Positions 26,501 to 53,856 of a stretch of DNA of 64,000 bases are shown in pieces (the first letter of the stretch is position 1; every line of letters starts with the position of its first letter). The position numbers were made by a program, and so were the translations under genes. The notes under the pieces were generated by a model. It saw only the letters and a program-made list of their open reading frames with translations, ran no database searches and was not told where the DNA came from. Origin of the DNA: Haliotis rubra (Eukaryota); assembly GCF_003918875.1 (NCBI RefSeq), contig NW_025767479.1, forward strand, positions 1,302,001 to 1,366,000, given 5' to 3'.

Positions 26501-29500
26501 ACAAATGAATAAAAACAAAATGCAAATATTAAAATTAAAACAGATTAAAGTTATAGGAACAATATCAGGCCATTACCTTGTTTGAGGAATGTATCCATCA
26601 ATATCCACAAAACTGTTCAAAATGATGTGTCTTTTAACAGTTTAATATACGAAAAAGTGATAAATCTTTTCAGGTATTGGTGTATAGTCTCATTGGTCAC
26701 CCAAGATAGCACACCTGGCAACTAATTGCATAATGTCCGCCTTTCATTAAAACAGTAATTTAGTTAGCCAATAATGGGCAATCAATCAATGTATTGCCGG
26801 TTAATCCTTTGAAAGAAGGGCGTTATTTTTACGCTTGACACCGACACGACAGAGTGTATTCAGTATAGATTAGTAAATCTACATACATAAACACTACCTT
26901 TTGACAATCCGCTGTGTAAGATAAAAGTAATTAATCAATCAGCGTGTTATCGGTTAATCCTTTGATCGATGTTTATAATGTTGAATATTTACTCCAGACA
27001 CAAGAAATGCCAAATGGGAACCTTTGTCGGGTAATCTAAGTGTGTTACCACTAATTATACCTGTTATAAATTCATTAACTGACCATCAAGTGAATGATGA
27101 CAAATAACATGTGTAGGTTTATACCACCTAACACGGGTTACAACAAGGGAGTATTAATTGCTGTATTGCATGTGAAAACTTATGGGCCGACACTGTTTGA
27201 GAATACAAACAGATTTTTACATGACATGATTAAATATCGAGGTAAAAAACACAGAAATGGGATCAATTTGGATCAGTCATTATACAAATAGGGCCCTACT
27301 GACACCAATCAATTGTGACAGAAGCGTCTATGAAAACAAGTTGTAACTTCGGAAACTAGGCAAAGCAGGAGACAAAATTAAATGCCAGTAGATTGTGAGA
27401 ACATATAGCTTTCATTTTTCCACAACAATTGTCACGATTTCAGGTTTATACAAGCCTGTAAACAAGATAATTTACCCCTAAAATGTAGATGAATTCTGCA
27501 TCGGCCCTCAAAGCTATTCCTCATATGGCGTCACAGAGTTAAGCTACCGGCTCTGATTGGTTGAAATTTAGATTCGCGGGTGAGAATTGTGCACTGTTGT
27601 CAAAAAGGTCGATTTAAGTCAATTAAAGGTCGAAATGAGTAGTTTTAATGACAGGGTTTCATTTATAACGATGCCAGTTAGTGATTTATGTATTTTTAAC
27701 CCCTAGGGTTTATGTGACCTTTAATATCAAATCATGCTGTCATGAAACAAGTCAAAGATAGAGTATTATGTCAATGAAGAAGAGAAATTATACCAATTAA
27801 TCAACAGGTGGCAAATTACTTACATACTTTAAATTATGGCGCTACTTCATTGTAACCTTGGGGCGGTGGGGTAACCTAGTGGTTAAAGCGTTCGCTCGTC
27901 ACACCGAAGACCCGGGTTCGATTCCCCACATGGGCAAAATGTGTGAAGCCCATTTCTGGTGTCCCCCGCCATAATTTTGCTGGAATATTGCTAAAAGCGG
28001 CGTAAAATCAAACTCACTCACTCATTCACTCATTGCAACCTCAGTGTGTGATGTCATATATTAGCACTGTGTGAAATGTCACTACAGGGTAGGATATATG
28101 GCCCCAGCACATATTTATCAGTATCTTGGAACAAATTGTTCAGAAACCTACATAAATTATATTTAAGGTAAATGAAATTAACTTTACATTCATGCAACAC
28201 TGTTTCGCTATGTTTACATGTAGATTTTTAAAATACCAGTATTGGGTAAGGTTATCTGTTTTGAATACAGAATAGTTGACACCATTAACACTATTTATGT
28301 TTAGTCTCTATGGTTTCATATGCACAACTTACTTACAGAACAAAATGGGTGCTAACACTTCATTTTGGTGATGAAATAAATTCATTTGTTAAATGTTTTA
28401 TGAGTTTTGATAACACTGGATAAAATATAACACCAACCTTCGTAACTAGAAATGGAAGTTAACAGTATTGTCCATATGAATACTGCCTCATCAAAACTTT
28501 TAGAGTTTGTGCTCCATATTAATATAACTATATTCCAGTGTTTACACTTTCAGATAAGAGGCCTGCTTCATCACAGTGATCCTAAGGTTACTCAGAGGTT
28601 TCTGAGGGTGATCGTGACCCTCATTAAGGAGATGACCAGTCAGTATCCATCACTGGGACAACAGCACCTGCTGGACCCCCTGGTGTCTCCGCTACAGCAG
28701 TGTGTGGACAGTCATGGTGAGTGAGTGAGTGAGTGTAGTTTTATGCAGCTTTTAGCAATATTCCAGCAACATCACGATGGGGGACACCAGAAATGGGTTT
28801 CACACATTGTACCCATGTGGGGAATCGAAATCCGGGTCTTCGACGTGACGAGCGAACATGGTGAGGAAGGTGTCACAGGTGCAATTGATTGATGCAGATG
28901 TCTGTTCCTGATCTTTCTTTGTAGAATTACTTTGACTAAGTCGCTTGTCATGAGAGGATAGTGTTTAATGTGCCTGTTTATTGTTATTCTTAAGGTACAT
29001 CAGTGACTTCCAAGATACAGGTGGTAGCATGTGGCAAGACTTTGACCCGATGTATAGAAGATATCTACAAGGTAGGGATCTCTAAACAGTCATCCAGGTT
29101 GGTAAGAACAGGATTCAATTAATGTCAGATTTGCCTACCTTCAGCTTGACTAAATATGTAGATGGAATCGCAGGTTAACTCTGATTTGTCCTCACTGTGC
29201 CCATGTTTACTAAAGTGGTAAACATCTATAACAGGATTACATACTAGATCAGGATATATAATGATAGCACTATTTTCCATGTGGCACCAAACTCCTCACT
29301 GTACTGTGTTGCAGGTGTATGTGATCAGCACGGAGGCCAGGGACTGTCTCTGGCCAGTCCTCCGTCGCTATGTGGCAGTTCTCTTCCAGCTGTACTTCAG
29401 CAGCAAGGAGGGCGTGTCACACCTCAGGTGGGTACGTAAGGGATGCAGGCCATGTGGAAACATTCAGTTGGTCTGTGATTTGTCTTATCAAAAAAAATCT

Positions 29501-32500: not shown

Positions 32501-35500
32501 TGTGTTGAATGAATGCAGTGTTTACTTGTGTTTTGACAGTTGTGAGGAAGACGGCATCTGTGTGGAGACTCGGGTGCGCTGCCTGGTGGAGCTGGTGAAG
32601 CACCTACAGGACAGCAGTGTCACAGGGGACTTCTTTATCAAGCTGCTCCAGGTATACGAGTCACACTACACTTGCTCATCAACAATGTACAATTCATTCT
32701 TGAAGCTTTGGCATCAAAACACCATGCCAAGATTTATGTGTGTATGTCTGCATTGGTAAGGGCTTTGTGTCTACAAATTGCAAGCATTGACCAGTAGGTT
32801 GCTACTTGTAGGATATATACTCTTGGAAACAAAAAAGGGAACACATGAAAGTACAAGTGTTCCTGTATTCTTGTACTTGCATGTGTTCCCTAATGAGAAT
32901 ATTATTTATTAAAGACTACATCAGTATGTATTTTCATATATTTAAGTCATAGGTAAATAGTTGTCATGTTAATTACAGTAAAAAATGCAAAGATGCCCCT
33001 TTGGTATAGTGTTAGTTAGTTGTCATCCTCCTCTTCAGGTTTCTATCTTTAGAATGTGACTTTCAATCACATCCATTGTTTGTTCAGTGAGAACAGTATT
33101 ACAATGTATTGGTAAATGAGGTATGACAAAATGATCACCATACTTTGTGGTGTATGGTAGTTATGAATGGTATGTGTTTTTGTTCATAGGAGCTAACGAT
33201 GATGGTGTCATCTCAGACTGGTGATGGAGAATCAATTTCTGTCTCCTGCCCCGAGCCAGAGAAGGAGCTGCTAATGCTGGAGCTTCAAGATACACAGGAA
33301 GTGGAACTCTTCAACAGGAGGCTGATTGTGCTGAACCTTCTGGCCTCTATGTGTGAAGAGCTGGGGCCGTCCTGTCTTAACAAAACACAACACATTCTGG
33401 CATTTGTCAGAGTAAGTAGTTGTGTAGCTTATCTATTTACTTACTTTTAAGGTGTACATCTCTGATCTCTGCATGAACTTCATGTTGTCACTTCATTTGA
33501 AGAAACAAAACTGCAAAAGACACAAGAAAATATGGTGACATGCAGGTGATGTTCAAAGTCATGTTAGCTTCGTGGTTAAAAGAGTTGCTCAGTCACGCCG
33601 AACACCGGGTTCGATTCCCAACATGGGTACAATGTGTGAAGCCCATTCCTGGTTTCCCCTGCCACAATATTGCTGGAATATTGTTAAAAGCGTATAAAAG
33701 CACTCACTCAAAGTCATGTCCTTCAAATGGTAAAGCAGTCATTATAATTAACATTCCATATTGTTTTGATGTGTTACCTCTGAAGCAATTATTTGGAAGA
33801 TATAACATTTCTGTTCTGAAATTTGAGGTAGTCAATCTGTAGGTTAGATACCTCATATTATTCTTCTTCTTTGGGGGCAGGGGACTGATTGCTTCAGATG
33901 TATGAATCAGTTGAAATATGTCTAAGTCTATGAATGACAGGTCTTCAGTGTCATGGTAGGATGAACCAATATTCTTTCCCTTACCCCCGAATTTAGATAT
34001 AATATCATGCTTGCAGGTCACCGAAGACCTGGGTTCTATTCCCCACTTGGGCACAATGTGTGAAGCCCATTTCTGGTGTACCCCGCCGTGATGTTGCTGG
34101 AATATTGCTAAAAGCGGCGTAAAACCAAACTCACTCAGTCATTCTTGCAGGTAACTCTGGAGTGAGGTGTGTGGAGTTTAGATATAACATGTATGGTTAC
34201 AGGCGACTATGGTACGAGGTGTGTGGAGTTTAGATGTGACATGTGTGGTTACAGGCGACTCTGGAGCGAGGTGTAGAGGTGTGTGGAGTTTAGATGTGAC
34301 ATGTATGGTTACAGGCGACTATGGAACAAGGTGTGGAGGTGTGTGGAGTTTAGATGTGACATGTATGGTTACAGGCTTACTCTGGAGCGAGGTGTAGAGG
34401 TGTGTGGAGTATAGATGTGGGCGTGTGGTTACAGGCGACTCTGGAGCCGAGGTGTGTAGAGGTGTGTGGAGTTTAGATGTGACATGTATGGTTACAGGCT
34501 TACTATGGAGCCGAGGTGTAGAGGTGTGTGGAGTTTAGATGTGACATGTATGGTTACAGGCAACTCTGGAGCCGAGGTGTGGAGGTGTGTGGAGTTTAGG
34601 ATGTGACATGTATGGTTACAGGCGACTCTGGAGCCGAGGTGTGGAGGTGTGTGGAGTTTAGATGTGACATGTATGGTTACAGGCGACTCTGGAACGAGGT
34701 GTGGAGGTGTGTGGAGTTTAGATGTGACATGTGTGGTTACAGGCTGACTCTGGAGCCGAGGTGTAGAGGTGTGTGGAGTTTAGATGTGACATGTGTGGTT
34801 ACAGGCTGACTCTGGAGCCGAGGTGTGGAGGTGTGTGGAGTTTAGATGTGACATGTATGGTTACAGGCGACTCTGGAGCGAGGTGTAGAGGTGTGTGTGG
34901 AGTTTAGATGTGACATGTGTGGTTACAGGCTGACTCTGGAGCGAGGTGTAGAGGTGTGTGGAGTTTAGATGTGACATGTGTGGTTACAGGCTGACTCTGA
35001 GCCGAGGTGTGGAGGTGTGTGGAGTTTAGATGTGACATGTATGGTTACAGGCGACTCTGGAGCGAGGTGTGTGGAGGTGTGTGGAGTTTAGATGTGACAT
35101 GTATGGTTACAGGCGACTCTGGAGCGAGGTGTAGAGGTGTGTGGAGTTTAGATGTGACATGTATGGTTACAGGCGACTCTGGAGCGAGGTGTAGAGGTGT
35201 GTGGAGTTTAGATGTGACATGTATGGTTACAGGCGACTCTGGAGCGAGGTGTAGAGGTGTGTGGAGTTTAGATGTGACATGTATGGTTACAGGCGACTCT
35301 GGAGCGAGGTGTAGAGGTGTGTGGAGTTTAGATGTGACATGTATGGTTACAGGCGACTCTGGAGCGAGGTGTAGAGGTGTGTGGAGTTTAGATGTGACAT
35401 GTGGTTACAGGCGACTCTGGAGCGAGGTGTAGAGGTGTGTGGAGTTTAGATGTGACATGTATGGTTACAGGCGACTCTGGAGCGAGGTGTAGAGGTGTGT

Positions 35501-38500
35501 GGAGTTTAGATGTGACATGTGTGGTTACAGGCGACTCTGGAGCGAGGTGTAGAGGTGTGTGGAGTTTAGATGTGACATGTGGTGTGGGGGACTCTGGAGC
35601 GAGTGTGGAGTTTAGATGTGACATGTGTGGTTACAGGCGACTCTGGAGCGAGGTGTAGAGGTGTGTCGGGCTACCATGGAGGAGCTGACTGGACTGTTTG
35701 AGTCGGAGACACTGAGTATGGCCATGGGATTGCTGACGGCAGTCATGGGAGGAGCTGTACAGGTGAGCCATGATGTCATTTTATGTAGCATTTATTCAGA
35801 GTATTTTAACATTTTCCTTCCATTGTTGGTACGGGTCTCTCTCAGTTCATCTCAAATCTAAAATAGACGGAATTGTTAACACTGCAAGTAAAATCACTGG
35901 AGTCAGATTTGAATGTTTATCATCAATATATGAGCGGCAAATTGTGAATCAAGCTGTCAAACTCATATCTGACCGTACTCAATACTTAAATTCGGAATAC
36001 ATCCTCCTCCAAAGTTCCAATTGTGAAAACTAAGAGAGCCCGTACATCCTTTATTCTAAGTACCATATCTCTCTTAAACAAATGTGAAGATACCTAAATC
36101 AAAGAATTTATGTAAATATGTTTGGTATCTCTCTAATGTGTCAGTAGCTCTGCTGATATAAAACAAATTCCAGAAAAGGCATTAAAGTATTATTCTATTC
36201 TATTCTATTCTATTCTATTCACATGACTTGCATCATGTGGTATATTTTTTACAAATCTCCACTCCAACTACAGTATCTAATATATGTGAGGCTTGAAGTT
36301 TGATACAAAGACTAGAACAATGTTGTGGTGTCCCTGACTCTGAGATGTTTGACTGATAACTGTTCCAGCGTTGAATTGACCTGATGCATGAAACTCACAT
36401 TTGTCAATTTTGCAACAGGTTGAAGAAGCTGATAGACAGATGATGCAGGAGTTGTTGCCCCTGCTTGATGGAATCAGACAGGAACATGCATCAGATGAAG
36501 TTAGAGAAATGGCAGATGATATTCGCATTGCCATAGCAACCAGAGGTGCCGTATGGTCAGAGCTGATGAAGAGCAAACAAGATTTAAAGAAGCAAACACC
36601 ACAGGTTAGAGAATATTCACTGTGTCACAGAATGCATTGTAGATTTACAGTATCCGAAAGGCTCACTGGTCAACATTGGGGATTCTGGATTAGAACTGGT
36701 CAACCTATGCTTGTTTTGTTTTGTTGTTTAATGCTACATTTGACAATATTCCAGCTATATGGCAGCGGTCTGTAAATAATTGAGTCTGGACCAGATAATC
36801 CAGTGATGAACAGCATGAGCATCGATCTATGTACATGGGATACAATGACCCGATCCCCGAAGCAGGGGATATAGTATTAGGCTCCGTACGTACGTACGAA
36901 TTGGAATATCTTAAGAACCATTGACTGGATTCTTTTCATACTTGGTACCTAGGTTCAACACAGTATAAGAAAGGTACCCTTTGTCAGGTTTGGTGACCTT
37001 GACCTTCATTTCAAGGTCACCAGGGGACTTAACATTTTACCCTTGTCAGCGAGATATCCCAAGAACCGTTCACTGGATTTTCTTCATATTTGACACCAAG
37101 CTTCATATAGGGAAGGTGCAGGGCCCAGTCGAGTTTGGTGACCTTCACATAATTTTCAAGGTCACAGCGACACTTTGAAGATTTCAGCATGTTAAGATTG
37201 TCAGCAAGATATCTCAAGAAGGGTTCACTGGATTTTCTTCATAGATTTTCAAGACTTCTCTTGAATGTTTTTTGATAAGCAATTTCTCTATTACTATTTT
37301 TTGCATATTTCATACACCATGGCATTCATGTCAAGGTCAAAGTGAGTCTTGAAAATATTTGTGTGTTTGAACAGCTACAGAGCAGAGCAAAATATCAAGA
37401 GAGGTTGACTGGTCATGTTTTTGTTGACATTTAACTTCATCTTTCATTACTCTTTAAGTTTGATTTGACAATATGCGGTGGGGATTATGTCACCTTAGTG
37501 ACAACTGCTTGTTCATTGATTAAATTTGATTTTCTATTGTCTAATAATTACTGGAATTTTGTGTTTGTAAAACTCTGTTGTCACTTTAAAGGTCTGTGTC
37601 ATGCAGTCAAATTTGTTCAACATATACCATACATGTCTGCATGTGTTTATTTAGGCAAAAGACAAAGGGACAGACAAGAAAAAGGCCACTGACCGTAAGA
37701 CTAAGAAACCATTGATAGAAGTTATCTCAGAAACATTGAATGAAACTTCACATGATGTCAACAGCTGTCAAGCTGAAATGATCAAAAACGAGGATGAGGT
37801 GCAAGCAGGTAACACAGGTTTAGCTGTTCCACATGAAAGACCAACTCCAGCCTCCCTCGAATCTTCTGGGCACCAACCTGTGTCTTCCCCGAAAGAAGGC
37901 AGTCCTTTCCCAGGAGAAAGAGAAGGCTCGGTTCAAGCCAGCAGAAAAGGAGGCTCTCCTCGTACAGGTGCAGAGGCAGACTCGCCTCACCCAAGTGGAG
38001 AACTAGAACAAGCCTTCAAGGAGCTATGTGACCCCGAGATCCCTGTCCGAGGTCATGGCTTGCTGCGTCTGACTCACCTCATTCAAAACAAGGATCCTTC
38101 AGTCTTGTCTCGACTGGAGACCTTGGTCAAGATATTTGAGGAGAATCTGCAACATCAAGATTCCTATCTGTACCTGGCTTCGGTCAACGGACTTGCAGCC
38201 CTCACTGACCGATTCCCTGATGTGGTGGTGCCAAGACTTGCCCAGGAGTTTGCAGAGACAGGTCCGCAGAAGTCAGCAGAACTGAGGATGAAACTTGGAG
38301 AAAGTTTAGTGAAGGCAGCAAGGAATTTAGGTATGTTTCATATAAAGTGCATTTAGATAGCTGCCTTGTAATAACTATGAGATGCCCAGTTTCGGTACAG
38401 TTACAGAATACCGGATACCTACCAGCCACGTGCACTTCTATTATAGGGAAGCACGAGCTGTAAAATTGTAAAAAATAAGGGTGCATGAAAATAAAAAATT

Positions 38501-41500
38501 AACCATAAAAATCGGATTACTTGGGACGACTTCCGGCCAGTAAAACTAACCAACGATTTTGAAATGAAAGGTAAGTTATCACAAATAAAAATATATCCGT
38601 ATTTGAAAAATGGGACACATGGAATTCTGGGAGTTGGAGCGATTCCGCATAATCCTAACCCTAACCTTATTCGTTAAACTACCCTTAAAGAAGATAGTAA
38701 CGTGTATCCAAGGGTTAAAAAAGTAAGTACGCTAAGAAAGCGAAGTTCTATAGTTTTCAAAGATGGCGGAAGGTATCCGGCAATCTGTAATCTTACCCCA
38801 GTTTCTTATGTGACCAAATTCACTTGTGTTACATGTAGTCCTGTAATGATTCACTCAGGTATTTGGGGTGGTGGGGTAGCCTAGAGGTTCGATCAAACCT
38901 GGGTTCGAATCCCCACATGGGTACAATGTGTGAAGCCCATTTCTGGTGTCTCTGCCATGATATTATATTTTGCTAAAAGCAGCGTAAAACTAAACTCACT
39001 CACTCACTCCTTGTCTTCATCTGCTAGTAAACTATGGTTACAAGATATTAGCCAACTGACAGTCTTCTTGTGTCTGTCAAGGTACGTCAAAAGCAGGTGT
39101 GAGGACACAATAATTTTGTGTTTGTAATCTGAACACCAAAAGTAACATCATGTGAATTCTGCATTCACAAGTTCACTCACTAACTCACGTATTCAGTAAA
39201 TTCAAGCAGTATTCCTGCATGAATTCAATTCATCCTTCATGATCACTATATGACGACTAATCTCTGTGTTAGGACCAAGATCCTTTATAATACTCAGATA
39301 CATGCAGCACTTTGATCATTGGTAGGACTCTGATTCATGTTTGGATTTAGATCAATGTCTGGACTCTGACTTCAATGTGTGATAGGTCTCAGATCCAGGG
39401 TAAGACTGAGATTCATGGATGCCATACTGTTAATACAAAACCAATTCTGTCCTGAAACAGGAGACATGATCCCCAAGTATCGCGAACTGCTGCTAGCTGC
39501 CGTCTTGTCAGGAGCTCGGAGTGATGATGCCATGGTCCGTGCCAGCAGTTTGTCCAATCTGGCCGAGATGTGCAAGCTGTTGAGGTTCTCCCTTGGAAAT
39601 GTGCTTCATGAGGTGTGTACCAGTGGAACATTTTCTTGGGGGACATTTGAAGGTGTTTTGAGTTGCTGAGAGGTGTTTGCCATATTTTGTTCATAAAAAG
39701 ATACATAATACAATTGTATGAGATAGAATAAGTACTGGTATTTAATGTTAAATTCATAGAGAATACTACACGAGGTCTCATTACATACGAATGATACGAA
39801 ACGAGTGTCCTTCCTATGGTATCTGACTGACCAATGGCGAGGTCAGATAACATAGGAAGATCACGAATTCAGATCATTCGTATGTAATGAGACCAGTAAT
39901 ATTTTATTTATTACCCCGTCTTACATGCATTAAATTGACAAAATAGCGTATTTTTGTTATTTTTGGTTTCAAACCGAAACCGGTTTCATAAAGAGGTTCG
40001 CGGAAGAGTTTTGTATTGTAGTACAATATTTGCATGGCGTCACACTGTAATGATGTCACTGCCATGGTAACCGGCGCCACGATGCATGTCAGTTGTCATC
40101 GCCTTCGTACAGCCTCCTACAGTAAACTACTCCGTTGCACCCGTTTCTTGGTTTGCAGTTGCTTCATTAGGCTAACATCACTGGTGGAAACATTGCGTTT
40201 ATGTTTTTAGACAGATATAATGTCTCAGTTCGACTCACAATTAAACAGCGACGCGGCAGCGTTCGCAATGTTTACTTTCCCACAATGCATTTAAGTTATA
40301 GAATGAATGAATTCACGTGTTCGTTATGAATGAAAAAATAGTTAAGTGAGACTGTGACCTAATAGAGGTCATGGGTTATCCAATCAAATCGTTAGAATCT
40401 CAGGTCAAGTCGTTACGACACAGGTCAACGCGATACGACACTCGTGTGACGTACGAGATTAGTATGCAACTACCCATACGTTGACCACGTGGGTAATAAA
40501 ATGTAATATTAACCCAACTGTTTGCTGTACATATTGGATGCAAAAATGTGTTGTAAAGAATATACAAATTTGTCTCCTTTCAGTAAAACAAAATTATGTG
40601 TCTGAAATCACTAACCACTAAAATTAATACTCTGGAATACATGTGTAATATTATATGGTTGGTACTTGATGGTTACACAGCCCTGTACCTGACACATGTT
40701 TTTATACATGTCAACCATGGAGGCATGAACACTTTATTAATACAATTCCACTACTCCCTAGGTGTTTGAGTGCTGCTCCAGCATTGTGAAGACTGACCCT
40801 GACCCAGAGGCCAGGAAGGCGGCCATCTTGACAATCACCCAGCTATTGCAAGGGTTGGGAGCTGATGCACCCAAGGTGAGTTGGCAGCAGACATATGAAC
40901 TCTTTGATGTCAACTTTTGTAGTGTGAGAAACTTGTGAATGCAGAATTAACATGAGGCAATATTGGTGTTCTGATTACAACCACAAAATGATTGTGTCCT
41001 CACACCTGCTTTTGACCCACATTGACAGACACAAGAAGTACTGGCAGTTGGCTAGTATCTTAACCATAGTTTACTAGCAGATGAAGGCAAGGAGGAGTAT
41101 GGTTTTACGCCGCTTTTAGCAATATTCCAGTAATATCACACGGGGAAAACAAGAAATGGGCTTCACACATTGTACCCATGTGGAGAATTGAACCAGCACC
41201 TTTGGTTTGACGAGCAAACGCTTTTACCTTTAGGCTACCCCACCGCCCCTGGAGGCGAGTGGGTCATGGTTTTGTCTTTCAGAATGGCAACGGACCGCCT
41301 CCGTGGTGTAGTGGTTAGAGCATCCACCCGGAGAGCGGAAGGTCACAGGTTCAATCCCCGACCCCGTCCTACCAAAAGACGTTAAAATATGGTACTTGTT
41401 GGTCCCTGCCTGGCGCTCGGCATTACTGGGTACAACAAGGACTGGTCGGCTCGGAGTCAGTATAATGTGTCTGAGTGGGGTATTCATGCTTCACTGCGTC

Positions 41501-42628
41501 ATGGTTTCTCAGTGGGCTAGCACTATAAAACCAGCTTAAGTCTGGGCTAGTACAAGCAGCCACACATACACATACACATGCATGCACGTCGTCATATGAG
41601 CGAAATATTCTCAAGCACGACGTTAAACCCAATTTCACCTCACCTCACCTCAGAATGGCAACGCCATTCTCACCCTGCATGGGTCATCAGTGTTCATCTA
41701 CAGCAGCACAATATAATTAGAATGCCAGGGACGGCAATGAGCAAGGTTGATAGTACTTGTCTCGGAAATGTCCCGGGTCCTCGGTGTGACAAGCGAACAC
41801 TTTAACCACTAGGCTACCCCACCGCCCCCATTGAAGGCAAGGAGTGTTCGGGACTAATGTGATCATTGTCTTCTGACTTCCATCTTATTGGGTATTTTAT
41901 AATGCTTGTGTTAATGTTCCAGAAATAACCACTAATTTCTTATGACTACACAATGCCATTTGAAATGTGGTGAAATGTAAAAGTGGGATTACACTTTCTC
42001 AGTAAAGGACAGAGTGGGCTGACTATGTGTGATGGTGATTAGGTGCCTGACTCAACCCGGACTCAACCCAACATAAGTACTAAAATCTGTACTTTACTGA
42101 GAAAGTTTAATCCCAAATATAACATACGTTTCATTTCCTATGGTTTGACACTACTGTTGAGACCTGTGAAGATCCGGGTTAAAATATTGGCCTTCAGTAA
42201 CCCATGCTTGTCGTAAGAGACGACTAACGGGATTGGGTGGTCAGGCTCGTTGACATGGTTGACACATGTCATCTGTTTCCAATTGCGCAGATCGATGCTC
42301 ATGCTGTTGATCACTGGATTGTCTGGTCCAGACTCGATTATATACAGACTGCCGCCACATAGCTGGAATATTGCTGAGTGCGGCGTAAAACTAAACTCAC
42401 TCACTCACTACTGCTGATGATTCTGTGTCTGTCTGTCCACAGTTTCTGGGGTCTCTGCTGCGAGACCTGTACCGTCTCCTGAAGCTGGTTCACGTCTCCG
42501 ATGAGGATGACATGGTGCGCACTCACACCCTGCTGGCTCTCAACGAGCTGGATGTCATCATGAGGGGAGCGCTCTTTCCTCAACAGAAACTGGAGAAGAA
42601 GATCACGATCTTGCACCCAGACTCTTGA
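20435..42628 (+). CDS. TANGO6: Transport and Golgi organization protein 6 homolog (Rtp1/TMCO7 family), 16 coding exons, ~1250 aa
   Basis: Exons 20435-20522, 21447-22527 (frame break near 22290), 22854-22989, 24023-24150, 28554-28716, 28995-29071, 29315-29427, 31745-31936, 32540-32651, 33190-33411, 35637-35762, 36419-36604, 37655-38330, 39461-39612, 40762-40875, 42443-42628. Family motifs: LQFTVCLGICP..GVGIPVERRS, PPWLRQVCG.LM..ILMRP.G, DPEIPVRGHGL, DSYLYLASVNGL (RTP1_C1-like), RASSLSNLAEMC, LRDLYRLLK. Confidence 0.93.
21447..22527 (+). CDS. TANGO6: TANGO6 exon 2 (contains a frame break at ~22283-22384)
   Basis: TTTTTCAG| acceptor; ORFs 21551-22384 and 22327-22611 are in different frames and both look TANGO6-like; donor AAG|GTAAGT. 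Confidence 0.85.
22854..22989 (+). CDS. TANGO6: TANGO6 exon 3
   Basis: SKDKGKQLPVSPPWLRQVCGRLMTDILMRPKGLLHVLQGMLPPGP. Confidence 0.92.
23050..23626 (+). mobile_element. Helentron-associated (HINE/DINE-like) element with two ~167-bp internal repeats
   Basis: TCCGTCC microsatellite head, tandem core repeats, 3' end GCGGGGGATAT...CTTGTT. Confidence 0.65.
24023..24150 (+). CDS. TANGO6: TANGO6 exon 4
   Basis: ...DWQRSQAIAMVIAHCPMQTASVEEYYKHISPQ. Confidence 0.92.
25166..27720 (+). mobile_element. Kolobok-like DNA transposon derivative
   Basis: TTAA|AG...CT|TTAA ends with imperfect TIR; internal THAP remnant; internal direct and inverted ~130-bp repeats. Confidence 0.72.
25468..25640 (+). pseudogene. 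THAP zinc-finger remnant of a transposase
   Basis: MPNCCFVLNCS*...MHRFPQDPAVRAKWVMFV...YLCSD with a stop and a frameshift. Confidence 0.8.
27860..28030 (+). mobile_element. SINE family A, full length
   Basis: tRNA-Asp(GTC)-like head; imperfect TSD TCATTGYAACCT. Confidence 0.9.
28554..28716 (+). CDS. TANGO6: TANGO6 exon 5
   Basis: IRGLLHHSDPKVTQRFLRVIV...LLDPLVSPLQQCVDSH; donor overlaps a SINE tail. Confidence 0.9.
28717..28856 (-). mobile_element. SINE family A, 5'-truncated, inserted in TANGO6 exon 5 donor
   Basis: TSD CATGGTGAG at 28713-28721 and 28857-28865. Confidence 0.88.
28995..29071 (+). CDS. TANGO6: TANGO6 exon 6
   Basis: GTSVTSKIQVVACGKTLTRCIEDIYK. Confidence 0.88.
29315..29427 (+). 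CDS. TANGO6: TANGO6 exon 7
   Basis: VYVISTEARDCLWPVLRRYVAVLFQLYFSSKEGVSHL. Confidence 0.9.
29655..31708. repeat. 11-bp minisatellite (TGTTGCTGTAA / TGTTACTGTAA), ~2 kb
   Basis: Directly visible; fills most of TANGO6 intron 7. Confidence 0.97.
31745..31936 (+). CDS. TANGO6: TANGO6 exon 8
   Basis: SSCEDILITFLKQAEP...LMFQPGDSGGLRAVLAPSD, phase 2-2. Confidence 0.9.
32540..32651 (+). CDS. TANGO6: TANGO6 exon 9
   Basis: CEEDGICVETRVRCLVELVKHLQDSSVTGDFFIKLLQ. Confidence 0.9.
33190..33411 (+). CDS. TANGO6: TANGO6 exon 10
   Basis: ELTMMVSS...RLIVLNLLASMCEELGPSCLNKTQHILAFVR |GTAAGT. Confidence 0.9.
34148..35666 (+). repeat. 60-bp minisatellite (~25 units) derived from the TANGO6 intron 10/exon 11 junction
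   Basis: Unit GGAGTTTAGATGTGACATGTRTGGTTACAG|GCGACTCTGGAGCGAGGTGTAGAGGTGTGT. Confidence 0.96.
35637..35762 (+). CDS. TANGO6: TANGO6 exon 11
   Basis: ATLERGVEVCRATMEELTGLFESETLSMAMGLLTAVMGGAVQ; first 30 nt equal half of the upstream 60-bp repeat unit. Confidence 0.9.
35779..36220 (+). mobile_element. LINE 3' fragment (Rex1/Babar-like)
   Basis: FYVAFIQSILTFSFHCWYGSL...IVNTASKITG resembles the post-RT region; ATTAAA then (ATTCT)n tail. Confidence 0.7.
36419..36604 (+). CDS. TANGO6: TANGO6 exon 12
   Basis: VEEADRQMMQELLPLL...EMADDIRIAIATRGAVWSE. Confidence 0.92.
36855..37514 (+). mobile_element. Helentron-associated (HINE-like) element
   Basis: CTCCGTACGTACG head, TGACCTT-containing core repeats, 3' hairpin TGTCAC...GTGACA then CTTGTT. 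Confidence 0.65.
37655..38330 (+). CDS. TANGO6: TANGO6 exon 13
   Basis: Contains ORF 37712: KPLIEVI, DPEIPVRGHGL, DSYLYLASVNGL, RMKLGESL. Confidence 0.94.
38394..38797. mobile_element. Merlin-like MITE
   Basis: TIR GGTACAGTTACAGAATACCGGATACC / GGTATCCGGCAATCTGTAATCTTACC; 8-bp TSD CCAGTTTC at 38386-38393 and 38798-38805. Confidence 0.8.
39461..39612 (+). CDS. TANGO6: TANGO6 exon 14
   Basis: DMIPKYRELLLAAVLSGARSDDAMVRASSLSNLAEMCKLLRFSLGNVLHE. Confidence 0.94.
40762..40875 (+). CDS. TANGO6: TANGO6 exon 15
   Basis: VFECCSSIVKTDPDPEARKAAILTITQLLQGLGADAPK. Confidence 0.93.
41095..41831 (-). mobile_element. Composite (dimeric) family-A SINE with a nested SINE
   Basis: 13-bp TSD TGAAGGCAAGGAG at 41082-41094 and 41832-41844; tRNA head + spacer + complete SINE A. 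Confidence 0.75.
41293..41649 (+). mobile_element. SINE family C (tRNA head, probably Meta-SINE type, (TCACC)n tail)
   Basis: A/B boxes; 14-bp TSD TCAGAATGGCAACG at 41279-41292 and 41650-41663. Confidence 0.85.
42443..42628 (+). CDS. TANGO6: TANGO6 exon 16 (terminal)
   Basis: FLGSLLRDLYRLLK...LFPQQKLEKKITILHPDS*; AATAAA at 42871-42876. Confidence 0.93.
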   Translation, partial: FLGSLLRDLYRLLKLVHVSDEDDMVRTHTLLALNELDVIMRGALFPQQKLEKKITILHPDS

Positions 42629-46400: not shown

Positions 46401-49078
46401 TTTAGTTCACATGAGCGTACGACAGTAATTTAAGAGTACTATATAACATTACGCCAGTATTGATACTTACACAGACTGACAGAGGTATTTTCCAATCTGA
46501 GCACTGACACAGGTACAGTTTTTGTCACAGCCATCTGCCCAGGAGTCGCCTTCGTTGTATGTTTTGCCTTTGAAGACGCACACCTTGGCTGTTGAAAGTA
46601 AGAGAAGATGCACATAGTGCATGGTGTTGCTTATTGAATGTACGGTAATAACTATATATACTTTTCAAACAGTAGGTGATCATTACGTATACGTGATGAT
46701 ACGTGGTCTTAAAAAAACGATAGGCGTTAGACGACAAATATACATATTATATGCAAGAACGTTCATTTCTGTAAAACTTAACACCAACACAAGTCCTATA
46801 GTTTTCACATGCTGCGGGAAGGAGCGTCACGCACATGCGCACGGTGACATTCCTGGTTAGTCTCTGTGGGTGATTATTTCTGAAAATCAAGATACAGTCG
46901 AGTTGTCTCGATATTCATGGGACCAAGAAAAAATATCGACTTATCCTAACTTCGAGACATCCGACCTGGGCATATCATCACATATCTTATAGTTGTGATT
47001 TACTAGATTGCATTCATTGTTCGTGAATGAACTGTCGACATCGCGCGGCTATGCGTTGGGCGTTGAAAGACACTAGCTGAGATCAGTGTGCCCTGGCCAG
47101 TACACCTTATGTTTCACAGTCTGTGATTAGCACACCATGGAACTGGCTCCAAGAAACCCAATATGTTGCGGATTGATACCCATTAGGGCGGCCCAGATCA
47201 ACAAGAGTAGAGAATTGACCTGAAACCAGGCTCCATGAGATCAACCGATTTACCACTGGATCGGTTATGGTGTCCAGTAGTGGTGGGAATTGGTTAAAAT
47301 CTCATAACTGATGATTGGTTTATGACAACCGACCAATCATCGAAATAATTGGTTAGCGTCATTTATAAAATTTTCCTGGTTATGTTTCTTAATGCACAAA
47401 ACATAAAGAAAAAATATGTAGTTCTTTCTGGGTTTTTTTTGGCAAATTTCACATCTTTACAGGATGACTGATACCTTATGAACATAAATTTCCCGGACTC
47501 TTTAAGATAATTTCACTCATGGCTTGGAATGAGCTAGTAGTGCTAATGCAATGTAACAGACAAAACCAACCTTGTGAAAAATATTGTTAATGCAAACAAG
47601 TGTTCCAAAATTGTTTGTGTTCGATTATGAGAAAACATGATCGATTTCTTGGTCGTTTACTCATTGCAACCAATCTTCGATTATTTCAATTAATCGGACC
47701 ACCACTAGTGTCCAGTGACATCACTATGTCAGCGCGAACAGAGCCCCCATATTGTGACGGATCACTGGACAGTACTATGGGGACAACTTACTAACCATTA
47801 TTGTCCCGTTTGATATGTGAGTAAGATGGGTGTTATGCTGCATTTAGCAATATTCCAGCAATATCACGGCGGAGGGCACAAGAAATGGGCTTCACACATA
47901 GAGCCCATCTGGGGAATCGAACCAGGGCCTTCGGCGTGACGAGCGAACGCTCTTACCAATAGGCTACCCCACCGCCCCTTGAGTGGGTCGAGGTTTTGTC
48001 TTTCAGAACAGCCACGCCTGTGCTCACCATGCTCAGACTGTCAGTGCTCACCTCAAGCAACAAACTAATTAGAATGCCAGGGACGGCTATGAGCTAAGTC
48101 GAAAGTACTTGTCTCTGAAATGATAGTGAAACGTGGACGCCATAGATAACACATGTTGGCGGAACTTGGCCAGGCGCTATAAGAGGAGTGTTACAGACTC
48201 CCACAACCCAATGGGGAGAGTCCTTCGCAGTGTGCCTCGTCCGGTGAACGCATGTTTGAGAAATCATGGCGATATTACGCATTACTGACCCAAAAAAGTC
48301 AACTTAGAATTTTCTCATTTTACCCATATCCTTTTAAGTTCGTGGGCGGACTTAAAATCTACTGCCATATTTTACTAAAGCTTGTCATGTGTTCCGAATT
48401 CTTTCATTACTATCATATTATATATCTATTACTAAAACTCATATTTCTCACAGGGGCGGTGGAGTGGCCCAGTGGTTAAAGCGTTCGCTCGTCACGCCGA
48501 AGATCGATTCCCCACATGGGTACAATGTGTGAAGGCGTAAACCTAACTCACTCACTCATGTTTCTTATATTACTGGGAGTTCTAAGTTATTATATTTGAA
48601 GGGTATACATGTTATATATTAAACTCATTGTAGTAATGGGTTCCAAACTGTTGTCTTAACGTACGTTTTTATACTAATATTACTATAATTATATTTTTGG
48701 TAACAAGAGTGAAATGTCTTGATGGAGCGTGATATGTATGTTGATATGTTACAGGAGAAGAATAAAGAGATTCCATAAAATGCTGACTACTTACTTGTTC
48801 CTGTGATTGCACCATTTGCCGCTGAAAAGAAATAATAAAAGTGTTATAATTGAATACGCATGCTCATCAGAACGCCATTGATCTACCTTCCAAAACCTAT
48901 TCAGACACTATTTCCCATAATATGTGAACATGTAATTAAGTTCGAGAGCCTAATGTTGTCACTTTGGTTGTAAAATTATATTTATGGGGTTAAATTTACA
49001 TTTTGGAGTATATATCTCTTTTCCAATCATTCTATATTTCTTCTTAAAATGTTTTGTGGTCTACATAGGCGGATCCAG

Positions 49079-49133
<55 letters not shown>

Positions 49134-52100
49134 CGTGCGTGTGCGTGCGCGCGCGTGCAGAGGTGCGCACTCCCCCGCCCCCTTTTTGGTCCTGTAAGTA
49201 TATTAAATGACTCTTGAAACTCCCGTGAAAACGAAGTGGCATTCCCCCCTTTCTCAAAAGTGTGCACCCCCCTCCCCTTCTCAAAAGGCTGAATCAGCCC
49301 CTGGTCTTCTCGTTTCTTGGCTTACTTTCACGTATTTTCCATTATATTCTAATTATTTCAATCTTTTTTTCAACTTTCGATTTCTTATTGATATTTTTTC
49401 AAAATTTCTGCTATAGTGTCCCGTTTTTAAGATGCTGCATAATTGAAATAACGAGAAAATTATGTATGTAAAGAGGGAAAATGAGAAAATTTAAAGAAAT
49501 AAAAAGTGGCATCATTAGGCTTCCGTACGAAAGAATTTTTGGCGCACGGTGATCACGTCATGGCGGTTTTTGATTACAGTGGACAGACTGAGGAAGCTCG
49601 CGTGATAGATAAGAAGAATATATCCAAAAACGGTGGCAGTCAAGGTTGGAATTTGTCCCTAGCGACCTATGGCCGTTGTGAGAGGCGACATAGGCGGTCA
49701 GGCTCGCTGACAATAAGTGTGTGCCATCGTACCCCGAAAACAGGAGTCTTTGTCGTAACAGCAATCACTGATATGTATGAGACTCGATTTTACGAGGCTG
49801 AAGTCATGTATCTGTAATATGTTTGTGTAAAACAACAAACAAATAACGTACGGCATAAACCGCAGAAGTTTGCACAATTGTCCTTTGCCCATTGGGAATA
49901 CTGGCCACCACAGGCTGCCTTCCCGTAATCCGGACAGTTGTTGAGCTTGTCAGCACAGCTCCCGCCAAGAGCGCTGGTAGTTTCTGGAAGTGGAAGTTAC
50001 ATGACGTTAGAGTGTCGATTGTAAGCCATTAATATGAATATTATCATAACAAACACACATGTGATACCATCCATATCAAGCGTATTATATACACACAGAA
50101 CTCAGTTAAGCATCCACTGACATATCTCACGATTGAATGAGCCCCGATCTTAACCCTTTGGAGCATATCTGGGACATGACTGGTCGTCGTGTGCAACATA
50201 GGGATCCTCCTGGACAGAACCTGGCCCAATTGGAAGCCGTTTTACACGCGGAACAGACTGTCCCATCAGAGGATCAGAAGGCTGACAGGGGGTATGAGGA
50301 GGAGGGTGCTGGCTGTCATATAGTCACATTGAGTTTACACTCGGTATTGACCTTGAACCGTGTAAGAAACGAAAAATGACATTTTGAATGTTCATATTCA
50401 CCAATAAATTCAACATTAAACATTCCAGGGCCATAGCTGTAGAGACATGGTTTCGTATGAAAATCAGTAGGTTTTTTTAAATTAGCAATTATCATAACAA
50501 AATCTAACATGGACTCCAATCATTTTGTCGTTTTTTTATGAGTCAAAGGATCATACGGGTCAGAAAAACTCATGTTTGTCCATAGTTTTATGTAGGTGCT
50601 GAAAACATATCATTGCAAAAATAGAGGGGTGCTTAATTGGGGCTGCTGTTTATCGTTACTTCTCAAACCCTCCACAGGGGTAATAGTTTCCGTAAACATT
50701 TAACATGTAACTGACTTTTGTTTGATTTCTTGTTTTCCGTTTTATGCTGTTTGCATGGAAACACACTTTAATTCGGAAGCGGATTCTTTTCTACATATGA
50801 ATGGTTCGTGTTGTGTCACATATTATTATCATTAAGTCTCAATATCCATCGTTATTGTTTATCAGTATGGTTATGATAAGCTTCACTGATTGAGTTAACT
50901 CGTCATGCCAAAGATCCGGGTTTGATTCCCGATATGAGAACCACGTGTGAGATCAGTTTACTGGTGTCCTCGGTTACTAGAATATTGCAGAACGTGGCCT
51001 AAAGACCAATCAGCCAACAATCGGCGTTACTGATGCTACCATATGTATTGTCTTTGATTTATTGTAATACTTACGGCAAAGGTTACAGGTTTTTTGACAG
51101 TTAATCTGGGCGAACTCAACATAGGTAGAACACAGGTCACTTCCAAGGTCGGCACAATTTGGCAGCTTGTCCACACATTGTTGTGAAGAGGTACTGGTCT
51201 GTGGGCTTCCTCCTGCAGACATGTAACAGGAAGTGCCAGTGATTGGTATAAAGAACTAACCAGAGGAGCTCTTTATCATCAATGTCCTCAGAATTAGCTG
51301 TGATTATATAGATTGACTGTTATTAATGACGTTGCTTTGCACAATTGGTTTCCAGATCCAGTTTCTCACTGTGTAACCATAATGTTCACCGCTTGCCAGA
51401 CACAACGGAATCTCTATTCTCAAATGCAACACTGATCCTTATAAAACATAATCTGAATTTGCATCATACTTTTATTTCTAACCTTCAAAAACCGCATCTT
51501 TAGCTGTAGCGGATATCATTACAACCTAAATCTCCACAGAACACAATGAGTATTTGGTAAGCGCTTTTGTAATAATCTCAATATATGTATATACATCTGA
51601 TATATATCTGAAAGCATGAGTCACGGGGACATCCGGGTCAATCGTCGGGTCTAGCCATTGCCTACCGCTGGCATATAAGGGTCACCTAAGAAACGGTAGC
51701 CAACGGCAATACCCTTTTCTTGTAGGTGACCGGGGAAGTGGTAGTGGAACACACAGTGGCGTTGTATATGTTACAGTAAATATGTACAACCAGTAAAATG
51801 TATATTTACTGATTCCGTCAGAGATTATGTATATTTACTGATATTTTCTGGGAATATACATATTTACTGAAATCTACATTGATTCATTTTACCTTTGCTG
51901 ACATCAAGATCTAAGAAGATAGGACATATAAACAACGATTTGTTTGCTATATATATACTTACCACAGTAGGAGCGGTAGGGTAGCCTGGTGGTTAAAGCG
52001 TTCGATCGTCACGCTGAAGACCCGGGTTCGATTCCCCACATGGGTACAATGTGTGAAGCCCATTTCTGGTATCCCCCGCCGTGATATTGCTGGAATATTG

Positions 52101-53856
52101 CTAAAAGCGGCGTAAAACCAACCTCACTCACTCACTCACTTACCACAGTATCCACAGCAGTTAGCCTGTGCCCACTGCGTGTATGATGAACAAACGTCTT
52201 TCCCATAGCTCGCACAGTTCTGGAGTTTGTCTGTACATGCCTGGCGCTTCACGATCAAGCCTGATGCACAAATAATAATTATCATAATGATGATAATAAT
52301 GACGATTATGATAATGAAGACGGTGGTGTTTTAAAATCCATTTATGCAGCCCGGATCGAGTCACAAAATGAATGTTTATGACACAACACTGTTCTTACCC
52401 GTTCTTTAAGATAGTGTGAACTCAAATTTCATTCTGAGCTTACTGGCGAGTAAACTACCCAAATTGCCTAAAGATTCGCTAAGGGGTTTACAGTCATTTA
52501 CCATCTCATTCTACCGGGTACCCATTCACAGCTGAGTGAACAAAAGAATATTTCGCTTGAGGAGATAACACATGTAAGCTGTAGAAGGACCCATCTGACA
52601 ATTCTCAACAAACCGAATTGCTTTGTAGCATTGTCACTCACCCCGTGTCGCCACACATTCTCACAAGGCTATGTACAAACCAAACGAAATCAATAATCCT
52701 TCCACGGATTTTACTGTGAAGACACGAAAGGTATACCTTTTCAGTAAACTCAACCAAAGTGTTTTATAAAACCCAGATTGTATTCAGGGATAATTGGAAG
52801 GCTGGGATACTAAAGGTCAATGGAACAGTTTAGTGTGACCTTTAGTGGATCCTGACTCTCATCACTAACGTAGCCACTTCCAGGCGAAAAATAAATTTAC
52901 ATTTTCTTTTTAAATTTCTTTCGACTTAACCGTATAGCCTAGTGGTTAAAGAGCTCGCCCGTCACGCCGAAGTTCGAGTTCGATTCCCCTAATGGGTACA
53001 ATATACCAAGGCCATTTCTGCTGTAGCCGTGCTGGAATGTTGCTAAAAGCGGCGTAAAAAAGTATTCACTCACTTTTGATACTACACTTGTCGATAAGAG
53101 ACGAGGTTCGATTTTTTCCTTCGTTTATCGGTTGATATATATGCTACTTAAAGTGTGATGTTTTCTGTAAATGATGTTTAAGATGTGTTTGAGTGTAGAA
53201 AATACCAATAACCATTTGGAAGTGACAATGCCAAGCCAGATACCAATCATTGCAGTGCGAGATAAAGCGTGTCTTGTATCCATTAACCGTGATTAAAATA
53301 GACACCAGTAAAAAGTTTAACATGAGAAGCAAACAGATTCACTTGACATGACATTCAGTCTCATGCATAGTTCGTCTGGAAATAGGTTGTCAACTGGTAG
53401 CAGTTAAACATTTCGAAAGACGAGAACGACAATTATTTCAAGAGACTACTCGCCAAGAATCAAAATCCTAAATAGACATTAATTCTTTATAAAATGAATG
53501 AATAATTTAGGATTTCATCCCTGAGAAAAATGTAAATAATATCAACGAGTCTGCTCAACATGAGACAAAAACAGTAAGTAGCGCTACCAAGATCAGCTGA
53601 TCCTGGTATGCTTAAGGGACGCAATTCTGATCAGCTTCCGCATTTTAAACGACGTGCACGCTTTGCCCCAAATGTAATTTTAATGAAATTAATTATTTTT
53701 TTCTTAAATAATAAAACGTATCCTTGGTTTCAAATTCAATAGAACGCTGACAAATATCCATTGAAAACACTAAAGTTAGTAAGAATGGTTAAAGTTCGTT
53801 ATGTACTTACCCGATACGGAGGCTAGTAAAGACAGAAATATAACAAGTTTCGTCAT
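43360..53856 (-). CDS. Secreted cysteine-rich protein: signal peptide + 3 ShKT domains + 2 VWC-like domains, 9 exons, 303 aa
   Basis: Exons 53811-53856, 52144-52260, 51075-51212, 49852-49983, 48795-48821, 46471-46588, 45218-45309, 44361-44475, 43360-43486 join in phase (912 nt), all GT-AG. ShKT pattern CxDKLxNC...C...NCxxxCxxC; VWC-like CxxKGxxY..G..W.DGC..C.C...CC..PNC. Confidence 0.88.
43600..44321. repeat. 35-bp minisatellite (ATAGATGTTCAGGATCTCATTAATATGCAAAGGTC), ~20 units
   Basis: Directly visible in the last intron of the ShKT-VWC gene. Confidence 0.95.
44361..44475 (-). CDS. ShKT-VWC gene exon 8 (VWC 2, N-half)
   Basis: VCVYKGQSYQQGQTWVDGCDYRCTCTDGKTGHYECNS. Confidence 0.9.
45218..45309 (-). 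CDS. ShKT-VWC gene exon 7 (VWC 1, C-half)
   Basis: CATYKNLPAGCQMMKQPGECCAKPNCPNLN. Confidence 0.9.
45340..45655. repeat. Degenerate ~69-bp tandem repeat
   Basis: AGTGAAGCTTCTTTAAT..GGACTCTCGCTTTCCTGAA recurs 4-5 times. Confidence 0.75.
45823..46130 (+). repeat. ~148-bp tandem duplication containing a Tc1 transposase C-terminal remnant
   Basis: Two near-identical copies; ELGQALH(K/E)EWNIL-like translation; related remnant at 48130-48290. Confidence 0.65.
46471..46588 (-). CDS. ShKT-VWC gene exon 6 (VWC 1, N-half)
   Basis: KVCVFKGKTYNEGDSWADGCDKNCTCVSAQIGKYLCQS. Confidence 0.9.
47278..47707. mobile_element. hAT-like MITE
   Basis: TIR TAGTGGTG/CACCACTA; 8-bp TSD GTGTCCAG at 47270-47277 and 47708-47715. 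Confidence 0.8.
47818..48115 (-). mobile_element. SINE family A with the same upstream spacer as the 41095-41831 composite
   Basis: 47980-48115 is homologous to 41257-41292 plus 41664-41763. Confidence 0.75.
48795..48821 (-). CDS. ShKT-VWC gene exon 5 (27-nt linker microexon)
   Basis: TTCTTTTCAG| PANGAITGT |GTAAGT, phase 1-1. Confidence 0.7.
49081..49158. repeat. (GT)n/(GC)n microsatellite inside a MITE
   Basis: Directly visible. Confidence 0.95.
49852..49983 (-). CDS. ShKT-VWC gene exon 4 (ShKT 3)
   Basis: CADKLNNCPDYGKAACGGQYSQWAKDNCANFCGLC, phase 1-1. Confidence 0.92.
50137..50350 (+). pseudogene. Tc1-like transposase C-terminal remnant
   Basis: SPDLNPLEHIWD motif. Confidence 0.8.
51075..51212 (-). 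CDS. ShKT-VWC gene exon 3 (ShKT 2)
   Basis: CVDKLPNCADLGSDLCSTYVEFAQINCQKTCNLC, phase 1-1. Confidence 0.92.
51970..52137 (+). mobile_element. SINE family A, full length, inserted in the ShKT exon 2 donor
   Basis: 13-bp TSD ACTTACCACAGTA at 51957-51969 and 52138-52150. Confidence 0.92.
52144..52260 (-). CDS. ShKT-VWC gene exon 2 (ShKT 1, atypical)
   Basis: LIVKRQACTDKLQNCASYGKDVCSSYTQWAQANCCGYC, phase 1-1. Confidence 0.88.
53811..53856 (-). CDS. ShKT-VWC gene exon 1 (signal peptide MTKLVIFLSLLASVS)
   Basis: ACCATG start, hydrophobic leader, G|GTAAGT donor. Confidence 0.85.

What the first reader, a model, noticed from the sequence alone, without database searches (positions are those of the whole stretch)
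51957..52150. SINE inserted exactly on a 5' splice site; the target-site duplication regenerates the donor
Seen: a full-length tRNA-Asp SINE (51970-52137) is flanked by ACTTACCACAGTA on both sides. On the gene strand this reads TACTGTG|GTAAGT, the last 7 nt of ShKT exon 2 plus its donor. The exon is intact, and a second, orphan donor lies 181 nt into the intron. The (ACTC)n tail runs straight into the ACTTAC of the target. Inference: the reverse complement of the donor consensus GTRAGT (ACTYAC) matches the SINE tail, so tail/target microhomology during target-primed reverse transcription would steer these SINEs to splice donors, where the insertion repairs itself. That would be a safe-harbour targeting mechanism; I do not know of it being described.
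Basis: partly seen in the sequence, partly recalled or inferred. Interest (0 to 1): 0.82.

Follow-up and report, generated by a model that had tools for sequence, protein, structure and literature searches.

The report
SINE inserted on a splice donor
An abalone SINE landed exactly on the exon/intron border of a small cysteine-rich-domain exon, and its 13-base target duplication keeps the splice donor intact. A sister species shows the empty site, but that these SINEs aim at donors is only weakly supported.

Summary
The window is Haliotis rubra. A full-length, (ACTC)n-tailed, tRNA-promoter-type SINE (51970-52137, +) is flanked by a perfect 13-nt duplication, ACTTACCACAGTA. On the minus strand this reads TACTGTG|GTAAGT, the end of an intact ShKT-type exon plus its donor.

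The H. rufescens ortholog has the same exon, no SINE and one copy of the 13-mer, so this is a real insertion on a pre-existing donor. A second case in the window, on a TANGO6 exon (TSD ATGGTGAG), is also empty in H. rufescens. The scan had already noted that second case here, and one similar case on other DNA of this genome.

SINE junctions overlap the tail more than chance allows, which fits the known pairing of tail and nicked target. Non-donor copies suggest about a 2-fold preference per matched base. That predicts only a 2-3-fold enrichment at donors, about 0.6% of genic insertions.

Eleven of 13 copies with clean duplications lie elsewhere. Two hits in one window is nominally unusual (P about 0.005-0.03), but not after 800 windows were read. 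No RNA data were available. The antisense tail also adds strong decoy donors 4, 8 and 12 nt downstream. A dedicated safe-harbour mechanism is not shown.

The parts
51957..51969 (-). Intron-side copy of the target-site duplication. On the gene strand it reads TACTGTG|GTAAGT, the orphan exon end plus donor (GT at 51963-51962).
   Evidence: It is followed by intron sequence that aligns with the H. rufescens intron start.
51970..52137 (+). Full-length family-A SINE, antisense to the ShKT gene. A box 51982-51992, B box 52025-52035, 3' module shared with family B from about 52076, (ACTC)n tail 52126-52137.
   Evidence: Both junctions are present in contigs of two samples of the same species, and the 3' junction in a species about 5% diverged. 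Absent in H. rufescens.
52138..52150 (-). Exon-side copy of the duplication: the last 7 nt of the exon (52150-52144) plus the donor GTAAGT (52143-52138).
52144..52260 (-). ShKT-type exon of 117 nt, phase 1-1, six cysteines. Acceptor ...tgcatcag|G, donor G|GTAAGT.
   Evidence: Pfam ShK E=0.15, below the cut-off. Intact in H. rufescens with 11/117 differences (5 synonymous and 5 non-synonymous codons) and all Cys kept.
52122..52137 (-). The tail read on the gene strand gives GTGAGT-type decoy donors 4, 8 and 12 nt, and a GTGAGG one 16 nt, downstream of the real donor. Using any of them would shift the frame or read into TGA.
   Evidence: Read from the sequence. Whether they are used was not tested, because no RNA run was found.
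51075..51212 (-). Next ShKT exon (138 nt, phase 1-1). It ends TGC C|GTAAGT, the same architecture as the exon above.
   Evidence: Pfam ShK E=3.5e-7.
49853..49983 (-). Third ShKT exon. It ends TGC C|GTACGT and is the first real exon of the 209-aa H. rubra model.
   Evidence: (ShK E=2.9e-5).
28554..28716 (+). TANGO6 exon (second case). It ends GTCATG|GTGAGT.
   Evidence: Pfam ARM_TANGO6 E=5e-12. 100% match to XP_046550543.1. Exact exon map. The exon junction is collinear with H. rufescens TANGO6.
28722..28857 (-). 5'-truncated family-A SINE, antisense to TANGO6. Its duplication ATGGTGAG lies at 28714-28721 and 28858-28865, and its tail supplies donor position +6 onward.
   Evidence: The H. rufescens site is empty: GTCAAG|GTGAGGGAGGTGTCACAG.

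Best explanation
This is an ordinary insertion by target-primed reverse transcription (TPRT) of an abundant abalone SINE that happened on a 5' splice site and was tolerated.

Inferred steps:
1. The partner LINE's endonuclease nicked the gene's sense strand just after GTAAGT, in an AT-rich context.
2. The freed 3' end ...GGTAAGT paired with the SINE RNA's (ACUC)n tail. Three terminal pairs form, then an A-C mismatch, then two more pairs.
3. That end primed cDNA synthesis.
4. The second nick fell 13 nt away, inside the exon.

Shown result: a 13-bp duplication that carries the exon's last 7 nt plus GTAAGT. The exon-side copy keeps donor positions -7 to +6 unchanged, and the antisense tail continues as (GAGT)n.

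The reverse complement of the tail is the 5' splice-site consensus. A modest pairing-driven preference for tail-like targets, about 2-fold per matched base, therefore makes donors slightly favoured landing sites. Insertions there survive because the donor is regenerated.

This is a by-product of sequence coincidence plus tolerance, not a dedicated targeting system.
For: - The duplication is perfect and the element is full length.
- The orthologous site in H. rufescens is empty, with one copy of the 13-mer, and the exon is conserved.
- A second independent insertion has the same geometry on a TANGO6 donor and is also empty in H. rufescens.
- Tail-consistent prefixes of the duplications in 13 copies have mean length 2.7, against 0.67 with no pairing (P about 1e-6).
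- Among 11 non-donor copies, 5 have a prefix of 3 or more against 1.7 expected for random sites (P=0.02). The maximum-likelihood weight is 2.1 per base.
- The model then gives 0.6-0.8% of genic insertions at donors, against 0.28% at random.
- The literature establishes that 3' microsatellite-like tails correlate with the first bases of the duplication, and that LINE RNA pairs with the nicked target (PMC6007223).
Against: - The sample is 13 copies from about 100 kb, and several prefix lengths are uncertain by 1-2 bases because of mutations.
- Conditional on the fitted preference, only about 0.16 donor hits are expected among those 13 copies, yet 2 are seen. Either the bias is stronger at donors, survivorship adds to it, or the window is a lucky one out of 800 read.
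- No RNA evidence shows that the ShKT donor still works. The H. rubra model on record omits this exon.
- The partner LINE was not identified.
Confidence: 0.55

Rival explanations
1. Pure chance plus tolerance. SINE integration is blind to tail homology when choosing a site. Pairing only sets the register in which reverse transcription starts. Two of about 30 insertions in this exon-dense window fell on donors by luck and persisted because the duplication and tail restore the donor.
For: - With random sites and best-register pairing, the mean overlap expected is already 1.5.
- The expected number of donor hits per window is 0.04-0.1, so about 1-4 of the 800 windows read in this genome should show two.
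- Genome-wide loose ends behind the tail are merely AT-rich, with no ACTYAC signal (table 7).
Against: - Non-donor copies still show an excess of overlaps of 3 or more (P=0.02; likelihood ratio 6.3 for a weight above 1).
- In both donor cases the duplication starts at the position of maximal tail match, +6 and +5.
Confidence: 0.3
2. Survivorship. Antisense copies elsewhere in introns plant strong GTGAGT decoy donors and are purged. Antisense copies sitting on a real donor are neutral and so are over-represented among the copies that remain.
For: - The antisense tail reads as repeated GTGAGT.
- Earlier unchecked notes report orientation bias of these SINEs inside other genes (s1-335142, s1-317988; s1-352202).
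Against: - Inside TANGO6, antisense copies with intact GAGT tails persist in intron 3 (24252-24362 and 24766-24953).
- Orientation is about even there, 5 antisense and 5-6 sense.
- Survivorship alone cannot raise a base rate of about 0.05% to 2 in 30.
Confidence: 0.1
3. A dedicated safe-harbour strategy. The SINE/LINE system has evolved its (ACTC)n tail so that it is directed to splice donors.
For: Only the coincidence of the tail complement with GTRAGT, and the two cases.
Against: - Eleven of 13 clean insertions are elsewhere, including tail-like non-donor sites such as ACTCAT at 48558 and CACTACT at 42409.
- Family B copies in H. rufescens carry (CAAA)n-like tails instead, so the tail is labile.
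- The tail creates out-of-frame decoy donors.
Confidence: 0.05

Closest known systems
Tail/target microhomology in TPRT of LINE-dependent SINEs with microsatellite-like tails (RTE-related retroposons, Nishiyama and Ohshima 2018, PMC6007223; also L1, CR1 and L2 3'-junction overlaps cited there)
   Same: The 3' repeat of the RNA overlaps the first bases of the duplication. Pairing with the nicked strand is proposed to help cleavage-site choice or the start of reverse transcription.
   Different: Here the repeat is (ACTC)n, whose complement is the 5' splice-site consensus, so a natural class of matching targets is functional donors. Overlaps reach 3-5 nt, against the 1-2 nt reported for animal RTE-related elements.
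Microsatellite-targeting non-LTR elements (Waldo, Mino, Kibi, Koshi, Dong; reviewed in PMC3812793)
   Same: The target resembles the element's own 3' repeat.
   Different: Those elements insert almost only into their microsatellite, and endonuclease specificity is thought to be responsible. Here most copies are at unrelated AT-rich sites.
Introner elements (PMC9860276, PMC12130899; that they use the target duplication for a splice site is from my own knowledge)
   Same: The target-site duplication contributes a splice signal, so the insertion is spliced out.
   Different: Introners create new introns in exons. This SINE entered an existing intron boundary and creates no intron.
SINE exonisation and splice-site donation by antisense Alu (from my own knowledge, not checked here)
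   Same: The antisense strand of a SINE carries splice-signal-like sequence.
   Different: Alu's antisense poly-T gives acceptor tracts. Here the antisense tail gives donors, and in the TANGO6 case it changes position +6 of an existing donor (GTGAGG to GTGAGT).

Membership tests
tRNA-derived, LINE-dependent SINE | Internal Pol III A and B boxes at tRNA-like spacing | tested here: met
   A box TAGCCTGGTGG at 51982-51992 and B box GGTTCGATTCC at 52025-52035. T-arm match GGGUUCGAUUCCC.
tRNA-derived, LINE-dependent SINE | Recognisable tRNA cloverleaf and identity (claimed to be Asp) | tested here: inconclusive
   ARAGORN found no tRNA in the window. Rfam gave no tRNA match at E up to 10. A GTC triplet sits in a possible anticodon loop, but with C rather than U before it.
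tRNA-derived, LINE-dependent SINE | Many dispersed copies, target-site duplications, 3' repeat tail | tested here: met
   33 blast hits in 64 kb. Summed contig depth on the element is far above that of its flanks in four runs. Clean duplications in 13 copies. (ACTC)n tails.
tRNA-derived, LINE-dependent SINE | 3' end shared with a partner LINE | not tested
   Only a second SINE family (B) sharing the last 60 nt or so was found. No LINE ORF lies in the window.
ShK/ShKT domain exon | Six-cysteine pattern and a Pfam PF01549 match | tested here: inconclusive
   Six Cys are present as C-x6-C-x7-C-x10-CC-x2-C. Pfam gives 13.1 bits, below the 20.9 cut-off. The two neighbouring exons pass at 31.1 and 25 bits.
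Target-specific non-LTR retrotransposition | Nearly all copies inserted in one target sequence | tested here: not met
   Eleven of 13 clean duplications are at unrelated sites.
TPRT with tail/target pairing | Overlap of tail and duplication beyond chance | tested here: met
   Mean overlap is 2.7 against 0.67 expected. P(7 or more of 13 copies with overlap of at least 3) = 1e-6 under no pairing.
Introner-like intron gain | The insertion creates a new intron | tested here: not met
   The intron and donor pre-exist in H. rufescens.

The most novel reading that the evidence does not exclude
The (ACTC)n-tailed SINE/LINE system of abalone has a real, genome-wide integration preference for 5' splice sites in antisense orientation. 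The cause would be that nicked sense-strand ends ...GTRAGT-3' prime efficiently on the tail. Donors would then act as self-repairing landing pads, and the insertions would renew donor consensus and seed 4-nt-spaced alternative donors.
Probability: 0.2. Interest if true: 0.7.

Novelty: new variant of a known kind. Interest (0 to 1): 0.45.

Why it matters
If the bias is real at genome scale, it would be a simple, testable example of a retroposon's tail sequence dictating where in genes it lands and whether the host tolerates it. It would link TPRT microhomology to splice-site turnover, to the orientation bias of SINEs in introns, and to the birth of tandem alternative donors.

As it stands, it is a cleanly documented pair of insertions on splice donors, each with an empty orthologous site. 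That makes it useful as a worked example and as a precise hypothesis for a genome-wide test.

Tried and rejected
- tRNA identity: ARAGORN and Rfam gave no tRNA call for the SINE head.
- RNA evidence: two run searches found no RNA run. The one read-laying run returned only DNA contigs that break at the repeat. It shows the SINE junctions in the same species and the 3' junction in a relative about 5% diverged, but gives no empty allele and no splice junctions.
- More genomic loci, to enlarge the sample: a word search with a SINE-derived ORF found nothing, and the H. asinina TANGO6 protein is not on record for a locus look-up. The test is therefore limited to the window plus the H. rufescens locus L002.
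- Old SINE near the next donor: the fragment at 50900-51013 ends about 60 nt from the exon-3 donor and is shared with H. rufescens, so it is not a third case.
- Copy at 48453-48557: it has a 5-nt tail overlap (ACTCAT) and lies antisense within the annotated range of the ShK/VWC gene model, but its target ATGAGT is not a donor.
- Literature: searches found no description of SINE insertion preference for splice donors. This covers only the open-access library.
Full report
**What is there.**
The window is Haliotis rubra. Locus L001, from assembly GCA_003918875.1, is identical to window 12384-52628.

At 51970-52137 (+) lies a 168-nt element. It has an A box, a perfect B box, a 3' module and an (ACTC)n tail. 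It is full length relative to other copies and belongs to a very abundant family:
- Family A gives 33 blast hits in the window.
- A second family, B, shares the last 60 nt or so and gives 38 more.
- Summed contig depth on the element is far above that of its flanks in four public runs.

The element is bracketed by a perfect 13-nt direct repeat, ACTTACCACAGTA, at 51957-51969 and 52138-52150.

**The exon.**
On the minus strand the right-hand repeat copy is TACTGTG|GTAAGT. This is the end of a 117-nt phase 1-1 exon (52260-52144) that encodes a six-cysteine ShKT-like domain.

- Pfam scores this exon below threshold (13.1 bits).
- Two more exons downstream (51212-51075 and 49983-49853) pass the ShK threshold. 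They share its architecture and end one base after the last Cys codon at a GTAAGT or GTACGT donor.
- The H. rubra gene model on record has 209 aa. It starts at a 7-nt ATGGATG exon and omits the two upstream ShKT exons.
- The H. rufescens model has 302 aa, matches ShK and spans them.
- Between the two species the exon differs at 11 of 117 positions. The frame is intact, all cysteines are kept, and 5 synonymous and 5 non-synonymous codons differ.

I take the exon as real but unconfirmed at the RNA level in H. rubra.

**Empty site.**
In H. rufescens the exon ends TTCTGTG|GTGAGT and runs straight into ATACAGATAGC. This aligns with what follows the orphan repeat copy in H. rubra (GTAAGT, then ATATATATAGC). 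There is no SINE and only one copy of the 13-mer.

So the SINE inserted on a pre-existing donor in the H. rubra lineage.

Contigs from public runs show both junctions in two samples of the same species. They show the 3' junction in a relative about 5% diverged. The insertion is therefore not recent, and no polymorphism was seen.

**Second case.**
A 5'-truncated family-A copy (28722-28857, -) lies antisense on the donor of a TANGO6 exon (28554-28716). Its duplication ATGGTGAG lies at 28714-28721 and 28858-28865.

- The exon matches Pfam ARM_TANGO6 and is 100% identical to XP_046550543.1.
- An exact spliced reconstruction places the annotated donor at 28716|28717.
- H. rufescens has GTCAAG|GTGAGGGAGGTGTCACAG with no SINE.
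- The protein junction is collinear between the two species.
- The tail changed donor position +6 from G to T.

The scan had already noted this case on this window. One similar case on another piece of the genome was also noted but is unchecked.

**How the junction formed.**
In TPRT the nicked strand's 3' end primes on the RNA's 3' end. With the SINE antisense to the gene, the primer is the gene's sense strand ending ...GTAAGT (ShKT) or ...GTGAG (TANGO6). That end can pair with (ACUC)n. This is inference from anatomy and from established knowledge (PMC6007223).

I measured the tail-consistent prefix of the duplication in 13 copies with clean duplications. Four of them, the two donor cases among them, were checked against empty H. 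rufescens sites.

- The mean prefix is 2.7 nt, against 0.67 expected with no pairing (P about 1e-6).
- If sites are random but reverse transcription starts in the best register, 1.5 is already expected.
- Among 11 non-donor copies, 5 have prefixes of 3 or more, against 1.7 expected (P=0.02).
- The maximum-likelihood weight is 2.1 per matched base.

**Does that steer SINEs to donors?**
I used the exact TANGO6 exon map with the SINEs masked. The share of insertions whose duplication would start at donor +2 to +8 in antisense is 0.28% for random placement. It is 0.6-0.8% for weights of 2-2.4.

- That is roughly 0.1-0.25 donor hits expected in this window, against 2 seen. The nominal P is about 0.005-0.03.
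- About 800 windows of this genome have been read, so several windows with two hits are expected.
- Conditional on their prefix lengths, I estimate by hand from the site counts that about 0.16 donor hits are expected among the 13 copies. This leaves a mild unexplained excess.
- Eleven of 13 insertions are at unrelated, mostly AT-rich sites. Genome-wide loose ends behind the tail are simply AT-rich (table 7).

The data fit a modest pairing bias plus tolerance. They do not show a dedicated mechanism.

**Is it harmless?**
Donor positions -7 to +6 are unchanged. However, the antisense tail adds GTGAGT donors 4, 8 and 12 nt downstream. Using any of them would shift the frame or read into TGA (sequence).

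No RNA run was available to test this. The RefSeq TANGO6 model uses the authentic donor. Antisense copies with intact tails also persist deeper in TANGO6 introns, and orientation there is about even. Purging of decoy donors is therefore not strict here.

**Verdict.**
The mechanism proposed for the junction is plausible and rests on known TPRT biology. Enrichment at donors is at most modest on present evidence and needs the genome-wide test.

Noticed in passing
L002:15687-16389: In H. rufescens an 88-nt x 8.2 tandem array starts 28 nt inside the TANGO6 exon and re-copies the exon end plus the GTGAGG donor. H. rubra has no array at this donor. It resembles the splice-donor minisatellites noted elsewhere in this genome (s1-341740).
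   Followed up: partly
window 34216-35666: A 60-nt x 24 tandem array lies in a TANGO6 intron. The RefSeq model places a 24-nt exon (34255-34278) inside it, which looks doubtful.
   Followed up: partly
window 20435-42628: H. rubra TANGO6 is annotated as two genes (341 aa with TANGO6_N, plus 908 aa). H. rufescens and H. asinina have single proteins of 1254 and 1259 aa. This is probably an annotation split.
   Followed up: no
window 50068-50074 and 51075-52260: The 209-aa ShK/VWC gene model starts with a 7-nt ATGGATG exon and omits two intact, conserved upstream ShKT exons. The H. rufescens model (302 aa) is long enough to include them.
   Followed up: partly
L002 copies at 4254-4440, 6759-7007, 11723-11919, 29495-29669: Family B copies in H. 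rufescens end in (CAAA)n/(AACA)n-like tails, whereas H. rubra copies end in (ACTC)n. The tail repeat has changed between lineages or subfamilies.
   Followed up: no
window 24766-25043: A family B copy whose 5' part (24982-25043, +) is inverted next to the 3' part (24766-24953, -). This is the pattern expected from twin priming.
   Followed up: no
window 42163-42409: A full-length family B SINE in sense orientation sits 34 nt upstream of the acceptor of the last TANGO6 exon. The site is empty in H. rufescens, with duplication CACTACTGYTGA.
   Followed up: partly
window 38897-39009, 41100-41249, 47817-47978: Three family-A copies share flanking sequence with one another. The 5' flanks of 41249 and 47978 match, and so do the 3' flanks of 39009 and 41100. 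They appear to be part of a larger duplicated unit rather than separate insertions.
   Followed up: no
13 SINE junctions in the window and L002: Duplications often begin TCA or TCC, and the base before the duplication is A or T in 12 of 13 copies. This hints at a nick preference W|TCA, but the sample is too small to judge.
   Followed up: no
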